A stretch of DNA of 63,694 nucleotides, the filler included, from Octopus bimaculoides (taxonomy: Eukaryota): NCBI RefSeq assembly GCF_001194135.2. It is 10 parts of 10 records of this genome, joined end to end, with 100 filler letters (N's around TTAATTAATTAA, not from the genome) between each part and the next. Parts side by side here need not be neighbours in the genome. Positions count along the whole stretch, not along the records: positions 8,551 to 16,717 come from NC_068991.1; 9 more parts are not named here. One strand, 5' to 3'. Of the stretch, positions 6,201-17,575 are shown piece after piece. The position numbers and the translations under genes are program-made. The stretch's first letter is position 1. Every line of letters begins with the position of its first letter. The notes beneath the pieces were generated by a model, which was not told the origin of the DNA, ran no database searches, and was given only the letters and a program-made list of their open reading frames with translations.

Positions 6201-6995
6201 ACAAAATTCATGTTACACAGCATTATCAAAGATGTTCTAACTAACCATCACATCTTTTATTTAGATCTAGTTTATTTCAGGTACATTATATAATACCAAC
6301 CTGTTAGTATTGGTAGCTATACTGCTCCTTCACCTAAGACCCAGAATGGAAGGGGAAAAGCTTCTTACTATACTTTACACTCTGATATATGATGGTAAAC
6401 TTTATGAAGTGTAATGTATTAGTCTCTTACCTTTGCACCTTCTGTCCATACTCACCCCTTATAATATTGGATAGTTCTAGACCCTATTTCCTATGCAATC
6501 CATGCTACCACATCTTTTACCTTATCTCTCTCTTTTTCTTAATCCCTGTCACTAATCACTCCCCTTTCCTGTCATACCCTCCACCCTTCCCATCATCCCT
6601 TCTTACTGTTCCCTTATGCCTCTGCCTAAGATTATGAACCATTGTCTCTTCTATTCTTCTTCAGCCACATGGGCCACAGCTTTGCAGGTTATTAAGTAAT
6701 CATCATCGATACTAATGCCAAGATAAAAAAAAGTACCAAGTACAGTTTGTAAAATGGTTAGCGTTAGGAAGAGTATCCAATCATAGAAACCATGCCAAAG
6801 CATACACTGGATTCAGTGCAGTCTTCCAGCTTGTCAGATCCTCTCGAATCCTCCAATTATCAGCTTGGAAGTCAGACACTGTCAATGACACTGATGACAA
6901 TGGCAAGAATGACGACGACGACAATGATGATGATGAGGAGGAGGATGTGGAGGCGGAGGAGGAGGATGTGGAGGCGGAGGAGGAGGTTGTACTCT

Positions 6996-8550: not shown

Positions 8551-8591
<41 letters not shown>

Positions 8592-8762
8592 ATATATACG
8601 TGAGTCGTCTAAGAGACCAATATCGTGAGAGCGATAGGTATTGCATGAGTATTTGATAGACGGAAACTGAGAAGAAGCCCGCCATATACATACATACATA
8701 CATACATACACACACACACACGCACAAACAAACACACACACACACACACACACATTCCATGT

Positions 8763-8856
8763 CGGCTACCACTGATGAGCGTAGATTTATATGATCGGAT
8801 TGTTACCTAACACTCCGTTGTACTCCTTGCGCGAAACCGATTGGTAACACCAGCCG
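8763..8856 (+). ncRNA. Degenerate type-I hammerhead ribozyme motif inside a SINE microsatellite
   Basis: Stem I CGGCT-ACCA / TGGT-AGCCG; core CTGATGA 8772-8778; stem II GCGTAG/TTGCGC; GAAA 8833-8836. Stem III and cleavage triplet are disrupted (CCGAT). Confidence 0.6.
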
Positions 8857-10241
8857 TGATGGATACATAATACTGTACATTTCGGATAATATATGTATGT
8901 GTGTGTGTGTGTGTGTGTGTGTCCTTACCACCGCCTGACAACCGGTGTTGATGAGTTAACGTCCCCGTTACTTAACAGTTTGGCAAAAGATACCGATAGA
9001 AAAGAAAAAAAAAAGAAGTACCGGGATCGATACATTCGACTAAATATTCTTCCATGCGGTGCCCCAGCACAACCGCAGTCTAATGATTGGATAAAAGATG
9101 TATGTATGTACGTACGTATGCATATTTATGTGTGTGTGTGAGTCTGTTTGCTCCAACTCCACCCCAACCGCTTGATAACTGGTGTTGGTCTGGTTTCGTC
9201 CCCGTATCTAGCGGTTCGGCAAAAGAGGACAATTGAGTAAAGTACCAAGCTTCAAAAAAAGAAAAAAATGTATTGGGGTTCGATTCGTTCGATTAAAAAC
9301 TTTTGAAGGCAATGTCCCAGTCTAAAGACTGAAACAAATAAAAGAAGAGAGAGAGAGAGAGAGAGAGGAATAGATGTTTAAATCAGACGGGTAAATAAGC
9401 ATGCGGATAGACAAATAGATAATAATCAGATATACTCGTATACACATAGACAAACATATAGATAAAGAGACACTTTCATGAAAAAATAAAAAAATAATAA
9501 TGATAATAATAAAATAAATAAACGTTTTTATCTTTCTCCATAGATGTTTTCAACTGATAAAAATCTACTAAACTTATTGTTTTGGCTTTAAATTCCATTT
9601 TACTCTACGTTTTATGTTACTACAGCATTTAAGTTTATTTTGTCTTTGTTTCGGATGATTTTTTTTTATTGACTGTCGTTTCCACACCAAGGTAACTCCT
9701 GTGTGATCCACAAGAAATCACTCCCCACTGTCTTGAAAAAGAGAAGGGCACAGTTTATTTATTTCTAGATACTCTTACGAATACTGGATGCTCTGATCTG
9801 GTTCGCCTCTGATCAGAGGTCTCCTTCGATCTTTTAATATATTCCTCAAATCACACACTGTCTTAAAAGAAAAGAAAAAGAAAAAAAAAATATCAGCGAG
9901 TCAGATCATGAGTTCTAGACACATTATTCTTGAAATTAAATCGTCGTGGTCACGGTTGGAACGTAGGTTTGTTCGATTACAGCTGATCTGAGTTAAATAA
10001 CAAGAGTTGTAGTAATATGAATGACAATAGCAGTAGCAGCAATGGGACTGAATTGACGTAAACAAATGTTTTGATAAAGGAAAAAGACAGGAGAAGGAGG
10101 AGGAGGAGGAGGATAAGAAAATGAGCGAGGGATAAAAGGAAGAATAAAGGGAGAAAGTGAGAGAGAGAGAGAGAGAGAGAGAAAGAAAGTGAGGGTGGTA
10201 GAGAGAGGAAGGGCACAGAAAGAGATGTATTGTTGACATGT

Positions 10242-10271
10242 TATATAAAAGTAGGCTTAAACTAGACAGTT
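10242..10271 (+). promoter_or_regulatory. Putative TATA box and initiator of the phosphatase gene
   Basis: TATATAAAA at 10242-10250 and CAGTT at 10267-10271. A possible 5'UTR intron follows (CTG|GTAAGG at 10449, TTACAG| at 10561). Confidence 0.4.
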
Positions 10272-10613
10272 TTAGTAGAAAATTATGCGGTAAACAACGC
10301 TGTACTTTAAGCGGAAAACAAAACAGAATTATTGGTCGAGCAATTTTAGATTTATTCCAGTTGAATATTAACTAAGAAATACAGAGAGAAGGACAGAGAG
10401 AGAGAGAAAGTGAGAGCGAGACAGGAGAAAACTACAGTTTTCTTCCTGGTAAGGCTCTTTTCTATGTAAATTCCTTTTAGTGCCATTTCTCTAGTCAGTG
10501 GTTATTTTCGAAGTAATTGTAACCTGAAAGGCATATCCTGTGACCACTCTGGCAATTACAGTACTACTATTGCTTATTTGAATATCCCCCAGTTTTCTAC
10601 TTTTCTGTCGAAC

Positions 10614-11459
10614 ATGAAAGACGAAGAACTCATCGTATGGACTACGCCGTCCATTCCTTCTTGGAATCATATGTACATGTTAGAAGCAATGACTTTTAAA
10701 GTGTGTGTACGTTTGGAATCGGACGCGTCACCCGACTCTGTCCGAGTACAGGCATGGACAAACATCTACCAAGCTGAAAACAGTGAAGGTTGTTGGCATG
10801 GAATAGATTTGCCATTTATTCAACGTGATACCGAACAAACAAGCGAAAGTGGCCGTAATGGTAAATCGTACCATCAACTGATATATGGCAAATCCGTTCT
10901 TTTAACTGGCTTCGGAATTTACCAATTCACATTTAGAGCTCGTTACAACACAGCGACCTCAGAATGGAAATGGAGGAATGCATATCAATCGGATGGAGTA
11001 ATCAATATTTCTCCTCCTACCATGGACAAATGGACTCAGGGACCCGATTTTGACCACATTGTGGATAATGTTCACCTTGGTAATTTTATAGCTGCGACTA
11101 AAGCTGAAGATCTTGGCTTCGATGCGGTCTTAAATGTGGCAGATAATCTAGATCTTATATTAGAACCAGATAGTAAACTGCTGTACAAGAAGGTTCCTAT
11201 GGCAGACGGTGCCCACAACCCGATAGAAGACTGGAAAATTAAGGAGGCGGTGGAATGGTTGGCCTCACATAAGTCATATAAAACATTGGTTAACTGTCGG
11301 GCTGGCATCGGTCGTGCAGGATCCACCGTCGTTTCTTATGTGTTCAAAACTAACCCTGACATGTCTTACAATGATGCTTATAAATTTGTTTTCAACAGAA
11401 GGTTTATTTACCCACACAAAGGATTAAAAGATACACTAAGTCAACTTTATCCAAAGTAA
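10614..11459 (+). CDS. Intronless 281-aa protein: unknown N-terminal domain (possibly carbohydrate-binding) plus dual-specificity protein phosphatase domain
   Basis: Uninterrupted ORF with AACATGA start context. DSP motifs: HIVDNVHLGN, FDAVLNVA, acid loop PMADG, P-loop VNCRAGIGRAGS, SYNDAYKFVFNRRFIYP. AATAAA at 11901-11906. Confidence 0.9.
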   Translation: MKDEELIVWTTPSIPSWNHMYMLEAMTFKVCVRLESDASPDSVRVQAWTNIYQAENSEGCWHGIDLPFIQRDTEQTSESGRNGKSYHQLIYGKSVLLTGFGIYQFTFRARYNTATSEWKWRNAYQSDGVINISPPTMDKWTQGPDFDHIVDNVHLGNFIAATKAEDLGFDAVLNVADNLDLILEPDSKLLYKKVPMADGAHNPIEDWKIKEAVEWLASHKSYKTLVNCRAGIGRAGSTVVSYVFKTNPDMSYNDAYKFVFNRRFIYPHKGLKDTLSQLYPK

Positions 11460-13892
11460 ATATTCAGTTTTATAAACACCCGACCAAGCTAGTAACCTTT
11501 ACACAAACAACCCGTTCAGTTTGTTGTTTACCTCATTCAGCCTGGAATGTGTGTCTGTGTATGTGATAAATATATCGCAATGTGTATATATGAACGTGTA
11601 TATAATGTATTTATGTTTTTTTTAAAATGCGTCTTAAAATAATCCAGTTTTAAGACTATTTTTATCATTAAAAATTATATTTTCTAGAATTGATTTTATC
11701 CATTGTTGATCTCTTCATGTTCTGGAACTATAATAAGAAAAATATTGATAATATTAATTAATATTAATGATTTTTTTTAAGCAAGTGTCAAAGAAAAACA
11801 ACAAACCAAAAAAAAAAAAAACAGTAAGATTGTTTTGGTTTGGGGAAAACTCTTTTTATATATATGTATATATTTTATACTTCAAACCTACTGCCACAAC
11901 AATAAACTGCAAAACTGCCAAGTTTGTTTGTGTTTATTCCAAGACACATTACTACACCTATATTCCTTCTCTTTACATATCTACCCCCCTCATTCTTCTA
12001 CTTTTACACCTGCTGTCCATTATTAAATCACTAGACACCTGCTGTTAATTATATCTCTGAACTGTCTTTAAAGAACGATTTTTTTTCTTTTTTTAATTCA
12101 CTGTCTCCATCCCAAGTATTTTTTCGGGTAGAGATAAACATATATTGACCTTTTACACTTTTATCTTAAATTCTAGACTTAAATTTTAAATGATAACCGT
12201 TTAGAATTGTCTTGATTCTATCATAAACATTATTTTTTTTATCGTTGTGTCATGGTTCTTTTATTTTGATTTGTTCTCTTCAATTATTTATGAATCTTGC
12301 GTAAATGTTTATTCCCCAAGCCCACTCCTTTGTGTGTGTGCGTTTTGTGTAATTGTATGTATTTTTTGCTATCTGTTGCAGTCACTTCTATTCCAAGAAT
12401 AATTCAGAGCTATTGCAGTGGTAATGTTTACACGGAAACGCACACATACACACACATATTCCTGGTTTATAAAATTCCATAACCAGTTGTATACTACTCG
12501 ATGTGTGTGTGGTTGACTGTTATATAAGTCAAACTGTTTAATTCTACACAGATATTGTTTCATAATTTGCTTAATATTAATTCTTTTTACTGGCTTCAGT
12601 CTTTAAACTGCGTCCATGCTAGGTCATTGCCTTGACGGGTTTAATTTGGTCATATCGATCCCAGTATTTATAAAACACACACACGCACACGCACACGCAC
12701 ACTACAAACGTACATACTACATATGTGTATTGAGGTGTTCATGTTTTGATTTCTGCCCTAGCTTGTTTTTTATATTCCTTTATAAAACTGCTGTAAATCA
12801 ATTTCCTCCAGTGCAATATTTAACTACCAGTCTTCGATGGTGTTTATTTCTGCTAAGTATCGAAAACACGAATTTGAGGTTTCCACTGTTATGGTTTAAC
12901 CATTATTGCGGAATAGAACAAGTGTAGCAGAAGTGCATTCCAACAGTCACCTTCGTCTTATGTCCAGAATGAATTCTTCTGCTTTACCCAAAGATCTCCC
13001 GCTCTCTTTCTCTCCACTGGGCATACATTTTATTTCTTGTAGAATTTTGATAACATTTAGCTCTCATGTATGAATGTTTGTGAATAGTGTATACACGTTT
13101 TAGGTATGTGTGCATTTTGATTACCACACGTCTTTGGACTGATAAGTGTGTATAAATTTACCAAAATACATATTGTCGCAAGTTCTTTTGTGTGTGTGTG
13201 TGTCTGTAGAGAGAGAGGAAGGGATTATTGTATGAATAATGCGGCTTTAATTAAAATGAAACCGAATAATGGGTATTACAGTATATCGGCACATAAATAT
13301 ATTACGTTGATATACTGTTGCACGTACTCTATCTATGCATGCATGTACGATGTGTATATAAAATTTTATTGTCGTACGTTCTTTCTTGCGTTAAGTTTAA
13401 TAGAAAAAAAAAAAATTAACAAGTTCACGTTAATTTTTTTTTCTTAAATCGATAAATTAGGAACGTTAAAATATTTTTTAAAAACTTTACCCGTAGTCAG
13501 TGTTTATAGTTTGACTGTTGAATTATATTTTGTGTGTTTTTAAAAGTTTTTTTTTCTTTTTATAACTAACACAAATATATCACATACGACAAAAAACACG
13601 CACAATTCGATGTCATAAAATAGAAACTATAACTCTACATGTGACTATGATTAACTCCAGTTGACACAGAATTAGGAGTAGAAAAAAAAATGAGAAAAAT
13701 ATTTTACTACGCGTAACGTAAAAAGAAAAAAAAATTACTAGGCTTCCACAAGGAATACGCCACGTATATATTATACATAAACTTTTTGCATCTTAAAGTA
13801 GGAATGGCAAATAATTTCGTTTTGTCATTGAGGCTTCTGGGTTCGCTTCCTCTGCATGGTAGTTTGAGCAAGTATTGTTTTCCAGGAACTTA

Positions 13893-14099
13893 TGTAGCGG
13901 TTCTTTGGATGGATTTTACCTCCAACTGAAAGGAACATGCCCCTTCGACTTTGTTAAGGGTACACACGCTGCGGCGGCGGAACCTAGTTCAATGATTAGA
14001 TAGTTCAGTTTGATTGAAGAACAGGAATCTTCATATTTGTGTGTGTGGTTGAATAAAGACTTTGTTTTGCAACCTCATCGACCTTGATTCATTCCTACA
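13893..14099 (+). mobile_element. LTR-like 207-bp segment nested in a SINE
   Basis: TGTAG...CTACA inverted termini and AATAAA at 14052. SINE sequence resumes on both sides (gagcaagt / gtcattttc). No clear TSD. Confidence 0.4.
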
Positions 14100-16317
14100 G
14101 CATGGAATCTCGGGATAATGTCATTTTCTAGAGCACTGAGTGGACCAATATCGTGTGAAGGTAGCTTGGGTAGATAGAAACGGTATAGAAGCTCACCTGT
14201 TATGATTGTACTTATTTAAATGTACAGCATTATCCACTAACAAATGTAACATTTAATGGTCTTCTCAGGCAGGATCAGTGTAACCATCTGTACCTTTTGA
14301 ATTACTGGTACAAATGTGTGTATGCCATGTTAAAAGCACCCAGCATACACTGTAAAGTGGTTGGCATTAAGAAGGGCATCTAGCTGCAGAAACTAAGCGA
14401 AATCAGACTGGAACCTGGGGCAGCTCTTCTGCTTGCTAGCTCGGGTCAAATCCTCCAGCTATGCCAGCATGGACAACAGACGTTAAATGATTGTGTGTAT
14501 GAAGATGTGTGGCTTAATGGTTAGGATATTCAACTCACAACTGTAAGGTCTCGGGTTCAATTCTCAACAGCACATTTTGTCTTTGAGCTAGACATTTTAT
14601 TTCATACAAGTAATTTTTATTTGCCTGTCGTGGTACTTAAATGAGAATGAGATGTAAGGTGACAACGTTTTTGAGATTCCGGTTCAAATGACATGAGTGT
14701 TTTTGTTTCACTTTTGACACGTAGTCTAATGACTGAAACCAGTAAAAGATAAAAAGTTCCCTACGTTTTATATGACAGAAGTTTCTTGTGTTTCAGGTGA
14801 AGTCCTCCTGTTGGGAGAGACCGAGAGAAAAGTTTGTCTTCATTCTTAGTCTGTGAGAATTTTGAACAATGTACATTAACAGGGAATGTCAAAGAATTAA
14901 GAATTGTGCGTGTGGAAGAGCTTGAAGTGGAGTGAGAGAAAACCTGTCTCTTAAATTCTCTCTGACTACTTACATCTCATCAATATGTATAAAAATTTTC
15001 GTTTTCAGTCTTCCCCCATCCTCCACTCCTTTGGCTCTCCTCATCTCTCAAATTTTAGATTGGTAGCATGCTGTCAAATTGCACTATTTCAGCGTTTGTT
15101 GACAGAACTTTTTCTGTTCCTTACATTATCAACTCTAGAGTTCCCCAGAGTCCAGTCGTCTCCTTCCTCTGCTCTCTTCCCTCTAAAAATCAATGACCTT
15201 TTCACCGTCATGTCCAACAACACACATTCTTATACAGATGATAATAATTTTCATTCTTCTCTAATCTTCCCCAGCCATGCATCATCCACATATAACAGAG
15301 ACACAACAAAAGACTATGTTGATTCCATGAAGTGAGACTTCGAAAGCAACCTCTGTTAGTGCCAGGCCGATCATGTCTTTTTGTCAACATTAAGAAAACA
15401 TGCATGCTCTCATAACACATACCACTCAACTAGAGCCCTTACAGTTGTTCCAAGTGTTGGGTTCTGCTATTACCAAAGGCACATCTTCTCAGCTACAACT
15501 GCATCCCAACAGGTAACTCTTCTCTTTGGGAGCAGTTACTAGATACAATCTTAGCTTAATTCCTCGCTCCTTCCAAGCAATCATTGACTTTTTAGAAAAC
15601 TCGGGTGAAGTTCTCATTGGAGTACTCCCACAATTGGTGTTGTGCTGCTGCTACACTCACAGGCATCCCTGATGGTATCCAGATGAGAGCCATCTGAACA
15701 GGTGCGGAGCTAGAGAGTGTGCCGCCTAGAGTGACCTTTCCGTTTGCTGCCCCTGGACCCCACAAAAAGCATTGCCAACAGCAGACCCAAAAGTGCCACC
15801 CGGTGTGGACTGCCCCTACTGCCCTACTCTAGCTATGCTAGTCCATCTGACCAACTGGTATAAAATCACTAATACACCTCATCTTTTCATTCATCTGCAT
15901 TCTGTCTCCTTTCTCTGCCTTTTCTGTCACAACTATAATGGCCTCTGTTCCTCACAGCTGGTTGGGCTAGTGCCACCTCTACTTAAGCATACCTGACTTT
16001 CCTCCTCATTTCTCTTGCTGTCACACTCCCAGGCCTTATGTTGAGAACCACACTCAATCCTTCTTCCCCAAAAGGTTCGCTCTCTTCTCATGTCTTTCCC
16101 ATACATGTTGACTTTCAATAATTCATGAGTAACATTAGCATAAGACTATATATATTTACACATGTGTGAAATTTGACTGGTGAATTCCACTGCTGCCATC
16201 TGCGATTGATTTTAGTTTAAGAGGCAGAGAGAAATACACACACACACATATATATATGCACACACACACAAACATATATGCACACACACACGTGTACACA
16301 TTCATATACATCACATA

Positions 16318-16475
16318 GCCATGTGGCTATGTGGTAAGAAGCTTGGTTCCCAACCACATGGTTCCAGATTCAGTCCCACTGTGTGGCACCTTAGGCAAGT
16401 GTCTTCTACTATAGCCTCGGGCCAACCAAAGCCTTGGGAGGATTTATTAGACAGAAACTGAAAGAAGCCTGTTAT
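16318..16475 (+). mobile_element. tRNA-derived SINE, 5' half
   Basis: TGGCTATGTGGTAAG A box, AGATTCAGTCC B box, CCTTAGGCAAGTGTCTTCTACTATAGCC core. Confidence 0.85.
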
Positions 16476-17575
16476 CTGTCTGTCTGTCTGTCTGTCTGTC
16501 AGAAGAGAGGAAAATAGAGAGATAATTAATAATTATTAATTTAAGAATTAGACGACATCACTGACAGCTGTTTTGATTCCAGACCTTTATAAATTAATTA
16601 CCATAATTAAAACCATTTAAAAGTCAAATCTCATCAGAGTTGGCTAAATATATACAATTTGGTGTTCAAATTTCTGCTTGTTGAGTATACAACTCCAAAC
16701 TGTATATATACATATATNNNNNNNNNNNNNNNNNNNNNNNNNNNNNNNNNNNNNNNNNNNNTTAATTAATTAANNNNNNNNNNNNNNNNNNNNNNNNNNN
16801 NNNNNNNNNNNNNNNNNGTGTGTGTATGTATATATATATACACGCACACACACAAATATATATATTATGTGTGTGTATGTATATATATATACACACATAC
16901 ATATATATAATATATATCTGTGTTCGCGTGTGTGTATGTGTGTGTGTGTGTGTGTATGCATTTTCGGTGACGTCTTTTATAGCAGCATCGCCATTGGCAC
17001 TACCAGTGACCAGTTAATATTCGTTAGACTCAAGAGAAGGAGCACTAAATATTACATAATGTGACAATACAACCTGGTAGCGAGCCGTTTCTACGCGTGC
17101 ATGTGTGCGTGAGTTTGCATCCAGTAACAAAAGTTTCTGCCACAAAAACAAGCTGAAATTCCAGTCAGTCATGTCAAATCGTCAGCGACCAAACAGCCGC
17201 GCCCACTTGTCTCATTTCGATACAAAACAATTCACTTTGAGAATTGCTTTCTTTGGGCATTGAAGAATTGTGTTTCATAATTTCTGAGACTATAAATACA
17301 GCTGCTTGCTGCCTTTACGCCTCTGATAATAAATATCTAGAGATGCAGGTCAAGCCACCGATAGATTCTACGTAGTCAAGCAACCCACTAGAAATAGTAA
17401 CCAACATCCCTACAGGTTGCATCCTACCATTTCAAGATATAAAACAGAAACGAACTAAGGGAATATGTCAGTGATGCTTATATTAGAGGACGCTTAACAG
17501 ACTAAGAGGTCACGGTTGGAATACATTTGACCCTAGAACAGCTCATTGAAACCACGTAACACCTTGGGCAAGGTG

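What the first reader, a model, noticed from the sequence alone, without database searches (positions are those of the whole stretch)
10614..11459. Intronless phosphatase with a laforin-like two-domain layout: candidate invertebrate glucan phosphatase
Seen: an intact 281-aa ORF. The C-terminal half is a DSP with catalytic Cys/Arg and acid Asp (PMADG, NCRAGIGRA). The N-terminal about 130 aa is aromatic-rich and predicted beta-rich (VQAWTNIY, CWHGIDLPF, YQFTFRARY, EWKWRN...DGVI). Known: glucan phosphatases (laforin, SEX4, LSF2) combine a DSP with carbohydrate binding and share a C-hydrophilic-AG-aliphatic-GR loop, which CRAGIGR fits, though Cdc14-type loops fit too. Laforin is reported missing from most invertebrates. 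Inference: the FTFRAR...WKW...DG pattern recalls, from memory, N-terminal modules of fungal Sip1/GH36 raffinose synthases, not CBM20. This may be an undescribed carbohydrate-binding module plus DSP fusion that dephosphorylates glycogen or another glycan.
Basis: partly seen in the sequence, partly recalled or inferred. Interest (0 to 1): 0.85.

Follow-up and report, generated by a model that had tools for sequence, protein, structure and literature searches.

The report
Octopus phosphatase with unknown β-sandwich domain
This is a real, conserved, single-exon octopus gene for an apparently active dual-specificity phosphatase fused to an undescribed β-sandwich domain; the layout resembles the glycogen phosphatase laforin, which protostomes are reported to lack, but sugar binding is unproven.

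Summary
Window 10614-11459 (+) is an intact 281-aa ORF, the only long ORF in the piece. It is 96% identical to an Octopus vulgaris protein and 72% to one from Argonauta, and it is under purifying selection (dN/dS 0.12).

The C-terminal half is a bona fide DSP: Pfam 55 bits, general acid D198, P-loop C228-R234. The N-terminal 137 aa fold with high confidence into a nine-strand β-sandwich that matches no Pfam, NCBIfam or PDB sequence.

The laforin-like reading is partly supported. The layout is the same, but the N-domain is not a detectable CBM20, and fold search on it alone returns only generic Ig-like sandwiches. The DSP scores closer to MKP and atypical DUSPs than to laforin, SEX4 or LSF2.

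The N-domain belongs to a wider eukaryotic family, mostly fused to this DSP. Profile comparison (97%) links it to bacterial modules that sit in front of a pullulanase and an α-amylase, but also beside lamin-tail domains.

The family is not animal-specific: it also occurs in fungi and stramenopiles. A glycogen-targeted phosphatase is the best single guess (about 0.4). No biochemistry exists.

The parts
10614..11459 (+). Complete single-exon CDS, 281 aa plus TAA stop
   Evidence: ORF list. 96% identical to a cluster containing Octopus vulgaris CAI9729773.1. Cross-species nucleotide similarity is confined to this span. dN/dS 0.12.
10614..11024 (+). N-terminal β-sandwich domain (aa 1-137) of a family with no Pfam, NCBIfam or PDB sequence match
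   Evidence: AF2 gives nine strands, pLDDT 89-93. No Pfam or PDB sequence hit. 119 relatives in the representative library. Fold search gives generic Ig-like/E-set sandwiches.
10755..10757 (+). W48 (in VQAWTN), at least 90% conserved across all N-domain architectures
   Evidence: Alignments A2 and A4
10794..10799 (+). W61-H62 (the 'WH' motif). W61 is at least 90% conserved across architectures.
   Evidence: Alignments A2 and A4
10929..10937 (+). T106-F107-R108 (the FTFR motif). T106 and R108 are at least 90% conserved across architectures.
   Evidence: Alignments A2 and A4. The motif is retained in the P0120 pullulanase modules as GFTARC.
10965..10973 (+). W118-K119-W120. W120 is the only invariant residue across 38 diverse N-domains.
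   Evidence: Alignment A4
11028..11045 (+). Junction 'KWTQGP' (aa 139-144). W140 is invariant in DSP-linked members and mostly absent where the N-domain has another partner. Probably the DSP recognition region or the domain interface.
   Evidence: Alignment A1 invariants. The A4 C-terminal columns compare DSP-linked members with others.
11046..11456 (+). Dual-specificity phosphatase catalytic domain (aa 145-281)
   Evidence: Pfam DSPc 55.4 bits. Foldseek TM 0.6-0.8 normalised to target, rmsd 2.2-5.3 Å, against DUSP5/7/10/22 and VH1/VHR. Profile against PDB.
11196..11210 (+). D-loop PMADG. D198 is the predicted general acid, 30 residues upstream of the catalytic Cys.
   Evidence: D198 and G199 are at least 90% conserved. 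The expected position of the acid is described in PMC5779698.
11292..11324 (+). P-loop NCRAGIGRAGS (aa 227-237): nucleophile C228 and R234. Asn replaces the usual His before Cys, and Ala replaces the usual Ser/Thr after Arg.
   Evidence: C228, R229, A230, G231, G233, R234, G236 and S237 are invariant. [NH]CRAGIGR occurs in 67 of 72 family sequences.
11397..11417 (+). R-motif region RRFIYPH (aa 262-268). Y266 and H268 are invariant. hhalign places Y266 opposite laforin Y294, a CBM-DSP interface residue.
   Evidence: PMC8564118 classes Y294 as a CBM-DSP interface residue.

Best explanation
The gene encodes a cytosolic, catalytically competent cysteine-based dual-specificity phosphatase. Its DSP domain is permanently coupled to an N-terminal β-sandwich domain that serves as its targeting or substrate-recognition module.

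The most likely target is glycogen or another α-glucan particle. On this reading the β-sandwich docks the enzyme on the polysaccharide. The DSP then removes phosphate, either from the glucan itself or from proteins bound to it, through the standard mechanism: C228 thiolate attack, R234 phosphate coordination and D198 general-acid catalysis.

This would be a laforin analogue, not a laforin orthologue. It would be built from a different non-catalytic module, in a clade reported to have lost laforin.

**Shown:** the gene is real and under constraint; DSP membership and intact catalytic residues; the β-sandwich fold; the confident two-domain model; the wider domain family and its fusion partners.

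**Inferred:** ligand, substrate and cellular role.
For: 1. The architecture matches laforin (N-terminal β-sandwich plus DSP). pTM 0.86 points to a fixed inter-domain arrangement, and laforin 4RKK is the top whole-protein Foldseek hit.
2. The family-invariant Y266 aligns with laforin Y294, which is a CBM-DSP interface residue (PMC8564118).
3. The N-domain profile is homologous to four tandem modules at the N-terminus of a secreted bacterial protein that continues into Pullulanase_N2 and CBM48. hhalign gives 97.6% and E 4e-12, against 0.1-0.4% for reversed and shuffled controls.
4. The same module type sits directly before a GH13 α-amylase catalytic domain in a Chloroflexia MAG.
5. Eukaryotic N-domains also occur in a GH36 Raffinose_syn protein and in a giant protein that has a GH13 domain.
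6. Fusions to a cNMP-dependent kinase and to a B56-like protein parallel known glycogen-tethered signalling enzymes such as AMPK-β CBM48 and PP1 G-subunit CBM21 (established knowledge).
7. The P-loop CRAGIGR fits the CxAGxGR form of LSF2 and OsttaDSP (PMC5779698).
8. Protostomes are reported to lack laforin, while oysters have a glycogen-centred metabolism (PMC12913940; PMC2714694).
9. Both domains are under purifying selection.
Against: - No sequence signal links the N-domain to CBM20, CBM21 or CBM48. CBM_20 hit 1 of 23 members at E 0.049, which is chance level. hhalign against the laforin CBM20 gave 1.5%. The N-domain profile against PDB sequences found nothing.
- The fold search of the N-domain alone is non-specific: fimbrial subunit, PD-L1 IgV, sulfite oxidase, arrestin-N, a GH5 accessory domain, and PTG CBM21 at only TM 0.42.
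- The DSP is nearer to MKPs and atypical DUSPs than to any known glucan phosphatase.
- CxAGxGR also occurs in Cdc14, PRL and PTEN (own knowledge).
- A sister type of the bacterial module alternates with what I read, from sequence motifs only, as lamin-tail (LTD) domains in giant secreted proteins. Other N-domain carriers have Fic, GNAT or sigma-70 domains. The superfamily is therefore not dedicated to glucans.
- The residues conserved across all contexts (W48, W61, T106, R108, W120) may be fold-core rather than ligand-binding residues.
- There are no biochemical data.
Confidence: 0.4

Rival explanations
1. It is a protein-directed DSP. The N-terminal Ig-like β-sandwich acts as a protein-protein interaction, dimerisation or regulatory domain that recruits a phosphoprotein substrate such as a kinase. 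Polysaccharide plays no part.
For: - The best sequence and profile matches of the DSP are protein phosphatases: DUSP10, DUSP7, DUSP6 and DUSP9 at 50-56 bits, and DUSP22, VH1 and VHR at 44-49 bits.
- The N-domain's fold neighbours are mostly protein-binding Ig-like domains: PD-L1 IgV, VEGFR-2, Axl and VDUP-1 arrestin-N.
- The same domain is fused to signalling proteins, namely a cNMP-binding kinase and a B56-like protein.
- No CBM signal was found.
Against: - There is no MKP-type rhodanese domain or kinase-interaction motif.
- The P-loop differs from the CxAGxSRS of MKPs and atypical DUSPs at two positions (Gly233 and Ala235).
- Scores fall off shallowly across DSP subfamilies, so the DSP does not sit firmly in any protein-directed subfamily.
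- Homologous modules are attached to GH13 and GH36 enzymes.
Confidence: 0.35
2. It is a phosphatase for another non-protein substrate, for example a phosphoinositide, an inositol pyrophosphate, a nucleotide or RNA 5' end, or a different phosphorylated glycan. The β-sandwich would act like a C2 or lipid/ligand-binding module.
For: - The P-loop has Gly at position +5 and Ala after the Arg (CRAGIGRA). By my own knowledge this resembles PRL, Cdc14, PTEN and SEX4-type loops more than classical DUSPs.
- Secondary Pfam hits are to PTP-SAK and Tc-R-P, DSP-like families of unknown substrate.
- Asn replaces the canonical His before the Cys in 60 of 72 members, which suggests atypical chemistry.
Against: There is no similarity to C2, PTEN-C2 or lipid-binding domains in the fold search, no basic-patch evidence, and no membrane-targeting signals. 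This remains pure inference.
Confidence: 0.15
3. It is a gene acquired by horizontal transfer or retroposition into the lophotrochozoan ancestor from a fungal or protist donor. Its present role would be unrelated to animal glycogen metabolism.
For: - The CDS is a single exon in a cephalopod, a bivalve and an annelid.
- All named animal hits are lophotrochozoan, while the two-domain family also exists in Mortierella, Linderina and Blastocystis.
Against: - Most hits are unnamed, so the apparent absence from other animals is not established.
- Origin says nothing about function.
- Long-term purifying selection on both domains shows it is a working host gene whatever its origin.
Confidence: 0.2

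Closest known systems
Laforin (EPM2A), the CBM20 + DSP glycogen phosphatase (PDB 4RKK)
   Same: - Same order of domains: N-terminal β-sandwich followed by a C-terminal DSP.
- Compact size and an integrated two-domain unit.
- CxAGxGR P-loop.
- A Tyr in the R-motif aligns with laforin's interface residue Y294.
- Laforin is the top whole-protein Foldseek hit.
   Different: - The N-domain is not a detectable CBM20 and has nine strands.
- The domain orientation differs: rmsd 18 Å over both domains, TM 0.37.
- The DSP is no closer to laforin than to generic DUSPs.
- Asn replaces His before the Cys, and Ala follows the Arg.
- No biochemical data exist.
Plant glucan phosphatases SEX4 (DSP + CBM48) and LSF2 (DSP with surface binding sites)
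   Same: A DSP with a CxAGxGR loop (PMC5779698), used together with a non-catalytic glucan-binding element. They show that glucan phosphatases have arisen more than once from different modules: Gentry & Pace call laforin and SEX4 functional equivalents that are not orthologues.
   Different: - The domain order is reversed in SEX4, and LSF2 has no separate module.
- LSF2 matches only weakly by sequence: E 2e-4 for the single sequence, and it is not among the 60 matches shown for the profile.
- The aromatic-channel residues could not be checked.
MAP-kinase phosphatases and atypical DUSPs (DUSP10/MKP5, DUSP7, DUSP6, DUSP22, VHR, poxvirus VH1)
   Same: These are the best sequence, profile and structural matches of the catalytic domain: 44-56 bits, TM 0.6-0.8 normalised to target, rmsd 2.2-5.3 Å.
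   Different: - Only about 21-28% identity.
- No rhodanese or KIM domain.
- The P-loop is CRAGIGRA rather than CxAGxSRS.
- Family-specific KWTQGP, GNFIAA and RFxYPH motifs.
- An obligatory N-terminal β-sandwich.
Glycogen- or starch-targeting β-sandwich modules on signalling enzymes (AMPK-β CBM48, PP1 G-subunit/PTG CBM21, STBD1 CBM20)
   Same: A small β-sandwich attached to kinases, phosphatases or their regulatory subunits. The N-domain family is likewise found on a DSP, a cNMP-dependent kinase and a B56-like protein. PTG CBM21 appears among the fold neighbours at TM 0.42.
   Different: No sequence relationship was shown, and the structural similarity is at the level of a generic Ig-like sandwich. 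Ligand unknown.
Unnamed bacterial tandem β-sandwich modules preceding GH13 pullulanase or α-amylase (P0120; Chloroflexia locus L004)
   Same: Homologous to the N-domain by profile-profile comparison: 97% probability over 116-121 columns. They share the W...W...G-Y-x-F-T-x-R...W pattern.
   Different: - They are extracellular, tandemly repeated and about 20% identical to the N-domain.
- A sister type (P0150, L009, L010) accompanies domains I read as LTD rather than glucan enzymes.
- They are themselves uncharacterised, with only weak GlgE_dom_N_S hits.

Membership tests
Dual-specificity phosphatase (VH1-like, Pfam DSPc PF00782) | Profile match above the curated threshold, and the DSP α/β fold | tested here: met
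   55.4 bits against a cut-off of 33.5. Foldseek TM 0.6-0.8 normalised to target, rmsd 2.2-5.3 Å, against many DUSP structures.
Dual-specificity phosphatase (VH1-like, Pfam DSPc PF00782) | CX5R P-loop with nucleophilic Cys and Arg, and a general-acid Asp about 30 residues upstream | tested here: met
   C228 and R234 are invariant. D198 is at least 90% conserved and lies 30 residues upstream. The canonical His before Cys is Asn, and the Ser/Thr after Arg is Ala.
Laforin (EPM2A) orthologue | N-terminal CBM20 with the CBM20 signature residues (Gentry & Pace 2009, PMC2714694) | tested here: not met
   No CBM_20 Pfam hit for the window protein. 1 of 23 family members hit at E 0.049, which is chance level. 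The N-domain-only fold search lists no CBM20 or laforin entry among the 50 shown.
Laforin (EPM2A) orthologue | DSP domain specifically related to the laforin DSP | tested here: not met
   hhalign of the DSP against laforin gave 93% at 21% identity. However, MKPs and atypical DUSPs score 44-56 bits, while laforin is not among the 60 PDB matches shown.
Laforin (EPM2A) orthologue | pNPP activity, amylopectin binding, and phosphate release from amylopectin | not testable with these tools
   Biochemical criteria from PMC2714694.
Glucan phosphatase (functional class: laforin, SEX4, LSF2) | DSP combined with a carbohydrate-binding module or surface binding sites | tested here: inconclusive
   A β-sandwich is present and homologous modules occur on GH13 and GH36 enzymes. 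They also occur in non-carbohydrate contexts. Binding has not been shown.
Glucan phosphatase (functional class: laforin, SEX4, LSF2) | P-loop of the form CxAGxGR | tested here: met
   CRAGIGR is invariant in the alignment. LSF2 and OsttaDSP share Cys, Ala, Gly, Gly and Arg at these positions (PMC5779698). The feature is not exclusive to the class (own knowledge: Cdc14, PRL, PTEN).
Glucan phosphatase (functional class: laforin, SEX4, LSF2) | Aromatic channel or platform around the active site that engages the glucan chain | not tested
   Model coordinates could not be inspected. Family-specific aromatics (W140, F158, Y266) lie in DSP motifs that sit near the active site in other DSPs, but their positions are unknown.
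MAP-kinase phosphatase subfamily | N-terminal rhodanese (CH2) domain with a kinase-interaction motif, and a CxAGxSRS loop | tested here: not met
   No rhodanese hit, and the N-terminus is a β-sandwich. The P-loop has Gly233 and Ala235.
CAZy-type carbohydrate-binding module (any family) | A discrete fold appended to carbohydrate-active enzymes, with demonstrated carbohydrate binding | tested here: inconclusive
   The fold is discrete. Some relatives are appended to a pullulanase, an α-amylase and a GH36 enzyme. Most are on a DSP, and some on unrelated proteins. Binding cannot be tested here.

The most novel reading that the evidence does not exclude
Lophotrochozoans, which are reported to have lost laforin, and several fungal and protist lineages would possess an independently evolved glycogen/α-glucan phosphatase. 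It would be built from a DSP and a previously undescribed starch/glycogen-binding β-sandwich family. The same module would also tether kinases, PP2A-type subunits and GH13/GH36 enzymes to glucan. Reversible glucan phosphorylation would then be far more widespread in animals than the laforin distribution implies, and a new CBM family would be defined.
Probability: 0.3. Interest if true: 0.8.

Novelty: new variant of a known kind. Interest (0 to 1): 0.55.

Why it matters
Laforin is described as the only known glycogen phosphatase (PMC12834914 abstract), and protostomes are reported to lack it. Yet molluscs store very large amounts of glycogen.

If this family binds and dephosphorylates glycogen, three things would follow:
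- It would help explain how laforin-less animals could handle glycogen phosphate.
- It would give a second, independent animal model for Lafora-type biology.
- It would add a new carbohydrate-binding module family, one shared with bacterial pullulanases and amylases.

If it does not, the result still defines a widespread, conserved and unannotated β-sandwich domain. That domain is a constant partner of a distinctive DSP with the loop [NH]CRAGIGR[AS]GS, and the substrate of that DSP is unknown.

Tried and rejected
**Searches that found nothing**
- N-domain profile (A2) against PDB sequences: nothing significant.
- Per-member Pfam scan of the N-domains at E up to 10: only chance-level hits.
- The search for homologous proteins with the diverse N-domain alignment A4: 2 hits. 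With the bacterial-module alignment A7: 0 hits. The word index is too insensitive for short divergent domains.
With A6 in metagenomes: 0 loci.
- P0172-type fungal proteins (N-domain plus about 440 aa): no Pfam or PDB match.
- DOI look-up of the Meekins 2015 paper that I recall as the source of the CζAGΨGR signature: not held. The signature therefore rests on PMC5779698 and my own knowledge.

**Ideas rejected**
The idea of a demonstrable CBM20 or GlgE-N relationship is rejected.
- I had recalled laforin Y294 as a glucan contact. PMC8564118 classes it as a CBM-DSP interface residue, so that argument was dropped.
- The short, roughly 160-180-aa metagenome hits at 55-58% identity (P0050-57) begin at the QGPDY domain boundary. 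I read them as broken gene models, not a DSP-only subfamily or a bacterial donor.
- The RT-like motif in ORF 14985-15335 has no Pfam support.
- The possible 46-nt leader intron upstream (10449-10494) is too short and was read by eye only, so it is not claimed.
Full report
**1. The observation**

The piece 8551-16717 is AT-rich, microsatellite-bearing eukaryotic DNA. It has no Rfam match. It holds one outstanding ORF, 10578-11459 on the + strand. The first ATG is at 10614, giving 281 aa; the next longest ORF is 116 aa.

The protein is 96% identical to a cluster that includes Octopus vulgaris CAI9729773.1, annotated only as 'specificity phosphatase family'. It is 72% identical to an Argonauta hians protein.

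Nucleotide similarity between the window and the Argonauta locus is confined to the CDS, 10611-11437 at 75.6%. dN/dS between the two is 0.12: 0.19 for the N-domain and 0.06 for the DSP, with dS near saturation.

The coding sequence is a single exon here and also in Argonauta, the bivalve Sinanodonta and the annelid Capitella. In detail: this is a real, constrained gene.

**2. The catalytic half**

Pfam DSPc matches aa 159-278 at 55.4 bits against a cut-off of 33.5.

In a 35-sequence alignment, C228, R229, A230, G231, G233, R234, G236 and S237 are invariant. D198 and G199 are at least 90% conserved, and D198 lies 30 residues before the Cys. This is the standard catalytic triad of Cys-based DSPs.

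The AF2 model (pLDDT 93.3, pTM 0.86) superposes on DUSP5/7/10/22 and VH1/VHR. TM is 0.6-0.8 normalised to the target and rmsd is 2.2-5.3 Å.

The P-loop [NH]CRAGIGR occurs in 67 of 72 family sequences. Two departures from the canonical HCxxGxxR(S/T) are family features:
- Asn replaces the His before the Cys in 60 sequences.
- Ala follows the Arg in most animal members.

By my own knowledge, an Ala after the Arg is seen in PRL and SEX4-type loops and slows breakdown of the phospho-enzyme intermediate. This is inference, not tested here.

Single-sequence and profile searches against all PDB sequences both give a shallow gradient. MKPs (DUSP10, 7, 6, 9) score 50-56 bits. DUSP22, VH1 and VHR score 44-49 bits. 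Laforin, SEX4 and LSF2 are not among the 60 matches shown.

The DSP therefore does not sit firmly in any characterised protein-directed subfamily. It also shows no special affinity to the known glucan phosphatases.

**3. The N-terminal half**

No Pfam, NCBIfam or PDB sequence matches aa 1-140, even with a 23-sequence profile.

AF2 predicts a nine-strand all-β domain with high confidence, both in the whole protein and alone (pLDDT 89).

Foldseek with the whole protein ranks human laforin 4RKK first, at E 2.5e-10 with 333 aligned columns covering both domains. Three things weaken this result:
- The margin over DSP-only hits is small (6.6e-10).
- rmsd is 18 Å.
- TM is 0.37, so the two domains are not oriented as in laforin.

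Foldseek with the N-domain alone returns only generic Ig-like/E-set sandwiches, at E 5e-5 to 2e-3 and TM 0.26-0.52. They include a fimbrial subunit, PD-L1 IgV, sulfite oxidase, VDUP-1 arrestin-N, an accessory domain of a GH5 mannanase (the best TM, 0.52) and PTG CBM21 (TM 0.42). No CBM20 or laforin entry is among the 50 listed.

**4. A wider domain family**

An exhaustive HMM search with the N-domain profile found 119 proteins.

The dominant partner is the same DSP: 24 of 58 mid-length hits, plus several long fungal proteins.

In Mortierella-type proteins the DSP is split by an insertion of roughly 350 residues. Octopus residues 41-189 and 191-278 align on either side of it. These are the same family, not a different architecture.

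Named carriers include Mortierella polycephala, Linderina pennispora, Blastocystis and Cantina marsupialis. The family is therefore not invertebrate-specific.

Other single-domain matches at 38-55 bits share the hallmark VQxWTN...GxWHa...fEFTxR...WxW pattern:
- An N-domain followed by two cNMP-binding domains and a protein kinase (Cantina).
- An N-domain with a B56-like region.
- An N-domain followed by a GH36 Raffinose_syn/Sip1 domain in the yeast Rhodosporidiobolus azoricus.
- Giant proteins combining GH13, Fic and the N-domain, or Fic, the N-domain and GNAT.
- A bacterial sigma-70 protein.

Across 38 diverse N-domains, W120 is invariant, and W48, W61, T106 and R108 are at least 90% conserved whatever the partner.

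**5. Link to bacterial glucan enzymes, and its limit**

One hit, P0120, is a secreted bacterial protein. It has four tandem copies of a roughly 125-aa module followed by Pullulanase_N2 and CBM48, and it matches pullulanase structures from there to the contig end.

The individual HMMER domain scores were weak (6-16 bits), so I tested the link by profile-profile comparison:

| Comparison | Probability | E-value |
|---|---|---|
| N-domains vs P0120 + P0150 modules (116 columns) | 97.2% | 4e-11 |
| N-domains vs P0120 repeats alone | 97.6% | 4e-12 |
| N-domains vs P0150 repeats alone | 92.5% | 5e-7 |
| Reversed control | 0.4% | - |
| Eight column-shuffled controls | 0.1-0.2% | - |

A scan of bacterial genomes found one more carrier, in a Chloroflexia MAG. 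It reads as a lipoprotein signal, one module, then the canonical start of a GH13 α-amylase ([23 protein letters not shown]...VQVSPPNEH). The gene is interrupted by what looks like an assembly frameshift.

That gives two bacterial cases where the module sits directly in front of an α-glucan-active GH13 enzyme. This is the position normally occupied by starch-binding modules.

However, metagenome relatives of the P0150-type module alternate with domains that I read as lamin-tail (LTD) domains, from their SEYVEGSSNNKAIE-type motifs only, and with Cys-rich repeats, in giant secreted proteins. The superfamily is a versatile β-sandwich and is not a dedicated glucan binder.

Weak recurrent hits of the bacterial modules to GlgE_dom_N_S could not be carried over to the eukaryotic N-domain.

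**6. Context from the literature**

- Gentry & Pace (PMC2714694) found laforin in only two invertebrates, Nematostella and Branchiostoma. They defined orthologues by CBM20 and DSP signature residues together with pNPP activity, amylopectin binding and phosphate release.
- A 2026 survey of CBM20 proteins in 74 metazoans concludes that protostomes and echinoderms lost laforin. Lophotrochozoans keep STBD1-type CBM20 proteins, and oysters have a glycogen-centred metabolism (PMC12913940).
- Laforin W32 and K87 are the CBM glucan contacts. Y294 and P301 are CBM-DSP interface residues (PMC8564118).
- The family-invariant Y266 (RFxYPH) aligns with laforin Y294. Together with pTM 0.86, this suggests an integrated two-domain unit.
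- No paper describing this family was found.

**7. Interpretation**

Shown:
- An apparently active DSP is permanently fused to a conserved β-sandwich of an undescribed family.
- Both domains are under selection.
- The family is old and patchily distributed across Lophotrochozoa, fungi and stramenopiles.

Inferred: the β-sandwich targets the enzyme.

The best single hypothesis is targeting to glycogen or another α-glucan, which would make this a laforin analogue. I put it at about 0.4. It rests on:
- the shared layout;
- the GH13 and GH36 associations;
- the parallel with glycogen-tethered kinases and phosphatases;
- the CxAGxGR loop;
- the reported absence of laforin in protostomes.

Nearly as likely, at about 0.35, is a protein-directed DSP whose Ig-like domain recruits a protein. 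It rests on:
- the MKP and atypical-DUSP affinity of the DSP;
- the generic fold neighbours of the N-domain;
- the signalling-protein fusions.

A different non-protein substrate is possible, at about 0.15.

The protein is not a laforin orthologue, because the CBM20 criterion was tested and not met.

**8. Verdict**

The finding is real.

It is a new variant of a known kind: a DSP plus a non-catalytic β-sandwich, as in laforin and SEX4, but with a different and undescribed module. Its function is unproven.

Interest is moderate to good. The hypothesis is cheap to test, and a positive result would bear on a long-standing question about glycogen phosphate in laforin-less animals.

Noticed in passing
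window 11292-11318 (aa 227-235): The canonical His before the catalytic Cys is Asn in 60 of 72 family members (NCRAGIGR), and the Ser/Thr after the Arg is Ala in most animal members. Both positions normally tune Cys pKa and phospho-enzyme turnover, so the kinetics may be unusual.
   Followed up: partly
window 9801-10550: A strongly purine-rich stretch on the + strand just upstream of the gene (GC skew +0.4, AT skew +0.28), with (GA)n microsatellites at 10151-10186 and 10383-10421. Possibly promoter-proximal low complexity.
   Followed up: no
window 16336-16440 versus L001 8511-8615: Apart from some low-scoring matches that look like simple repeats, this is the only block outside the CDS with octopus-Argonauta similarity (tblastx 54-65% over 25-35 codons). 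It lies about 5 kb downstream in octopus and about 1.7 kb downstream in Argonauta. It could be a small conserved exon or a regulatory element.
   Followed up: no
window 14985-15335: A 116-aa ORF contains 'FPRVQSSPSSALFPLKINDL...YTDDNNF', which resembles decayed reverse-transcriptase motifs of a non-LTR retroelement. Pfam gave no hit.
   Followed up: partly
L004 5806-7849 (Chloroflexia MAG CAVPIK010000038.1): A lipoprotein with a β-sandwich module and a GH13 α-amylase is split into two overlapping frames near nt 6578. This looks like an assembly frameshift. A GH2 gene and a CBM96-containing protein lie nearby.
   Followed up: partly
L009 975-6653 and L010 2700-5948 (metagenome contigs): Giant secreted proteins are built from alternating Cys-rich repeats, the P0150-type β-sandwich module, and domains I read as lamin-tail (LTD) from their sequence motifs only. 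Function unknown.
   Followed up: no
P0136 (2242 aa) and P0156 (2858 aa), Logan assemblies: Very large proteins combine a Fic domain with the N-domain, plus either a GH13 α-amylase domain or GNAT and a weak HATPase_c match. This architecture is odd and the source organisms are unknown.
   Followed up: no
P0116, P0118, P0119, P0124, P0166, P0167 (Mortierella-type, 636-792 aa): In these proteins the DSP domain is interrupted by an insertion of roughly 350 residues, between the LNVAD strand and the Y-x-K strand. The short metagenome fragments P0050-59 carry His/Gln/Asn-rich insertions at the same site.
   Followed up: partly
L001 12175-12843 (Argonauta): MCM8 lies about 5 kb downstream on the opposite strand in Argonauta. 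No MCM8 similarity was detected inside the window piece, so synteny could not be confirmed within 5 kb.
   Followed up: partly
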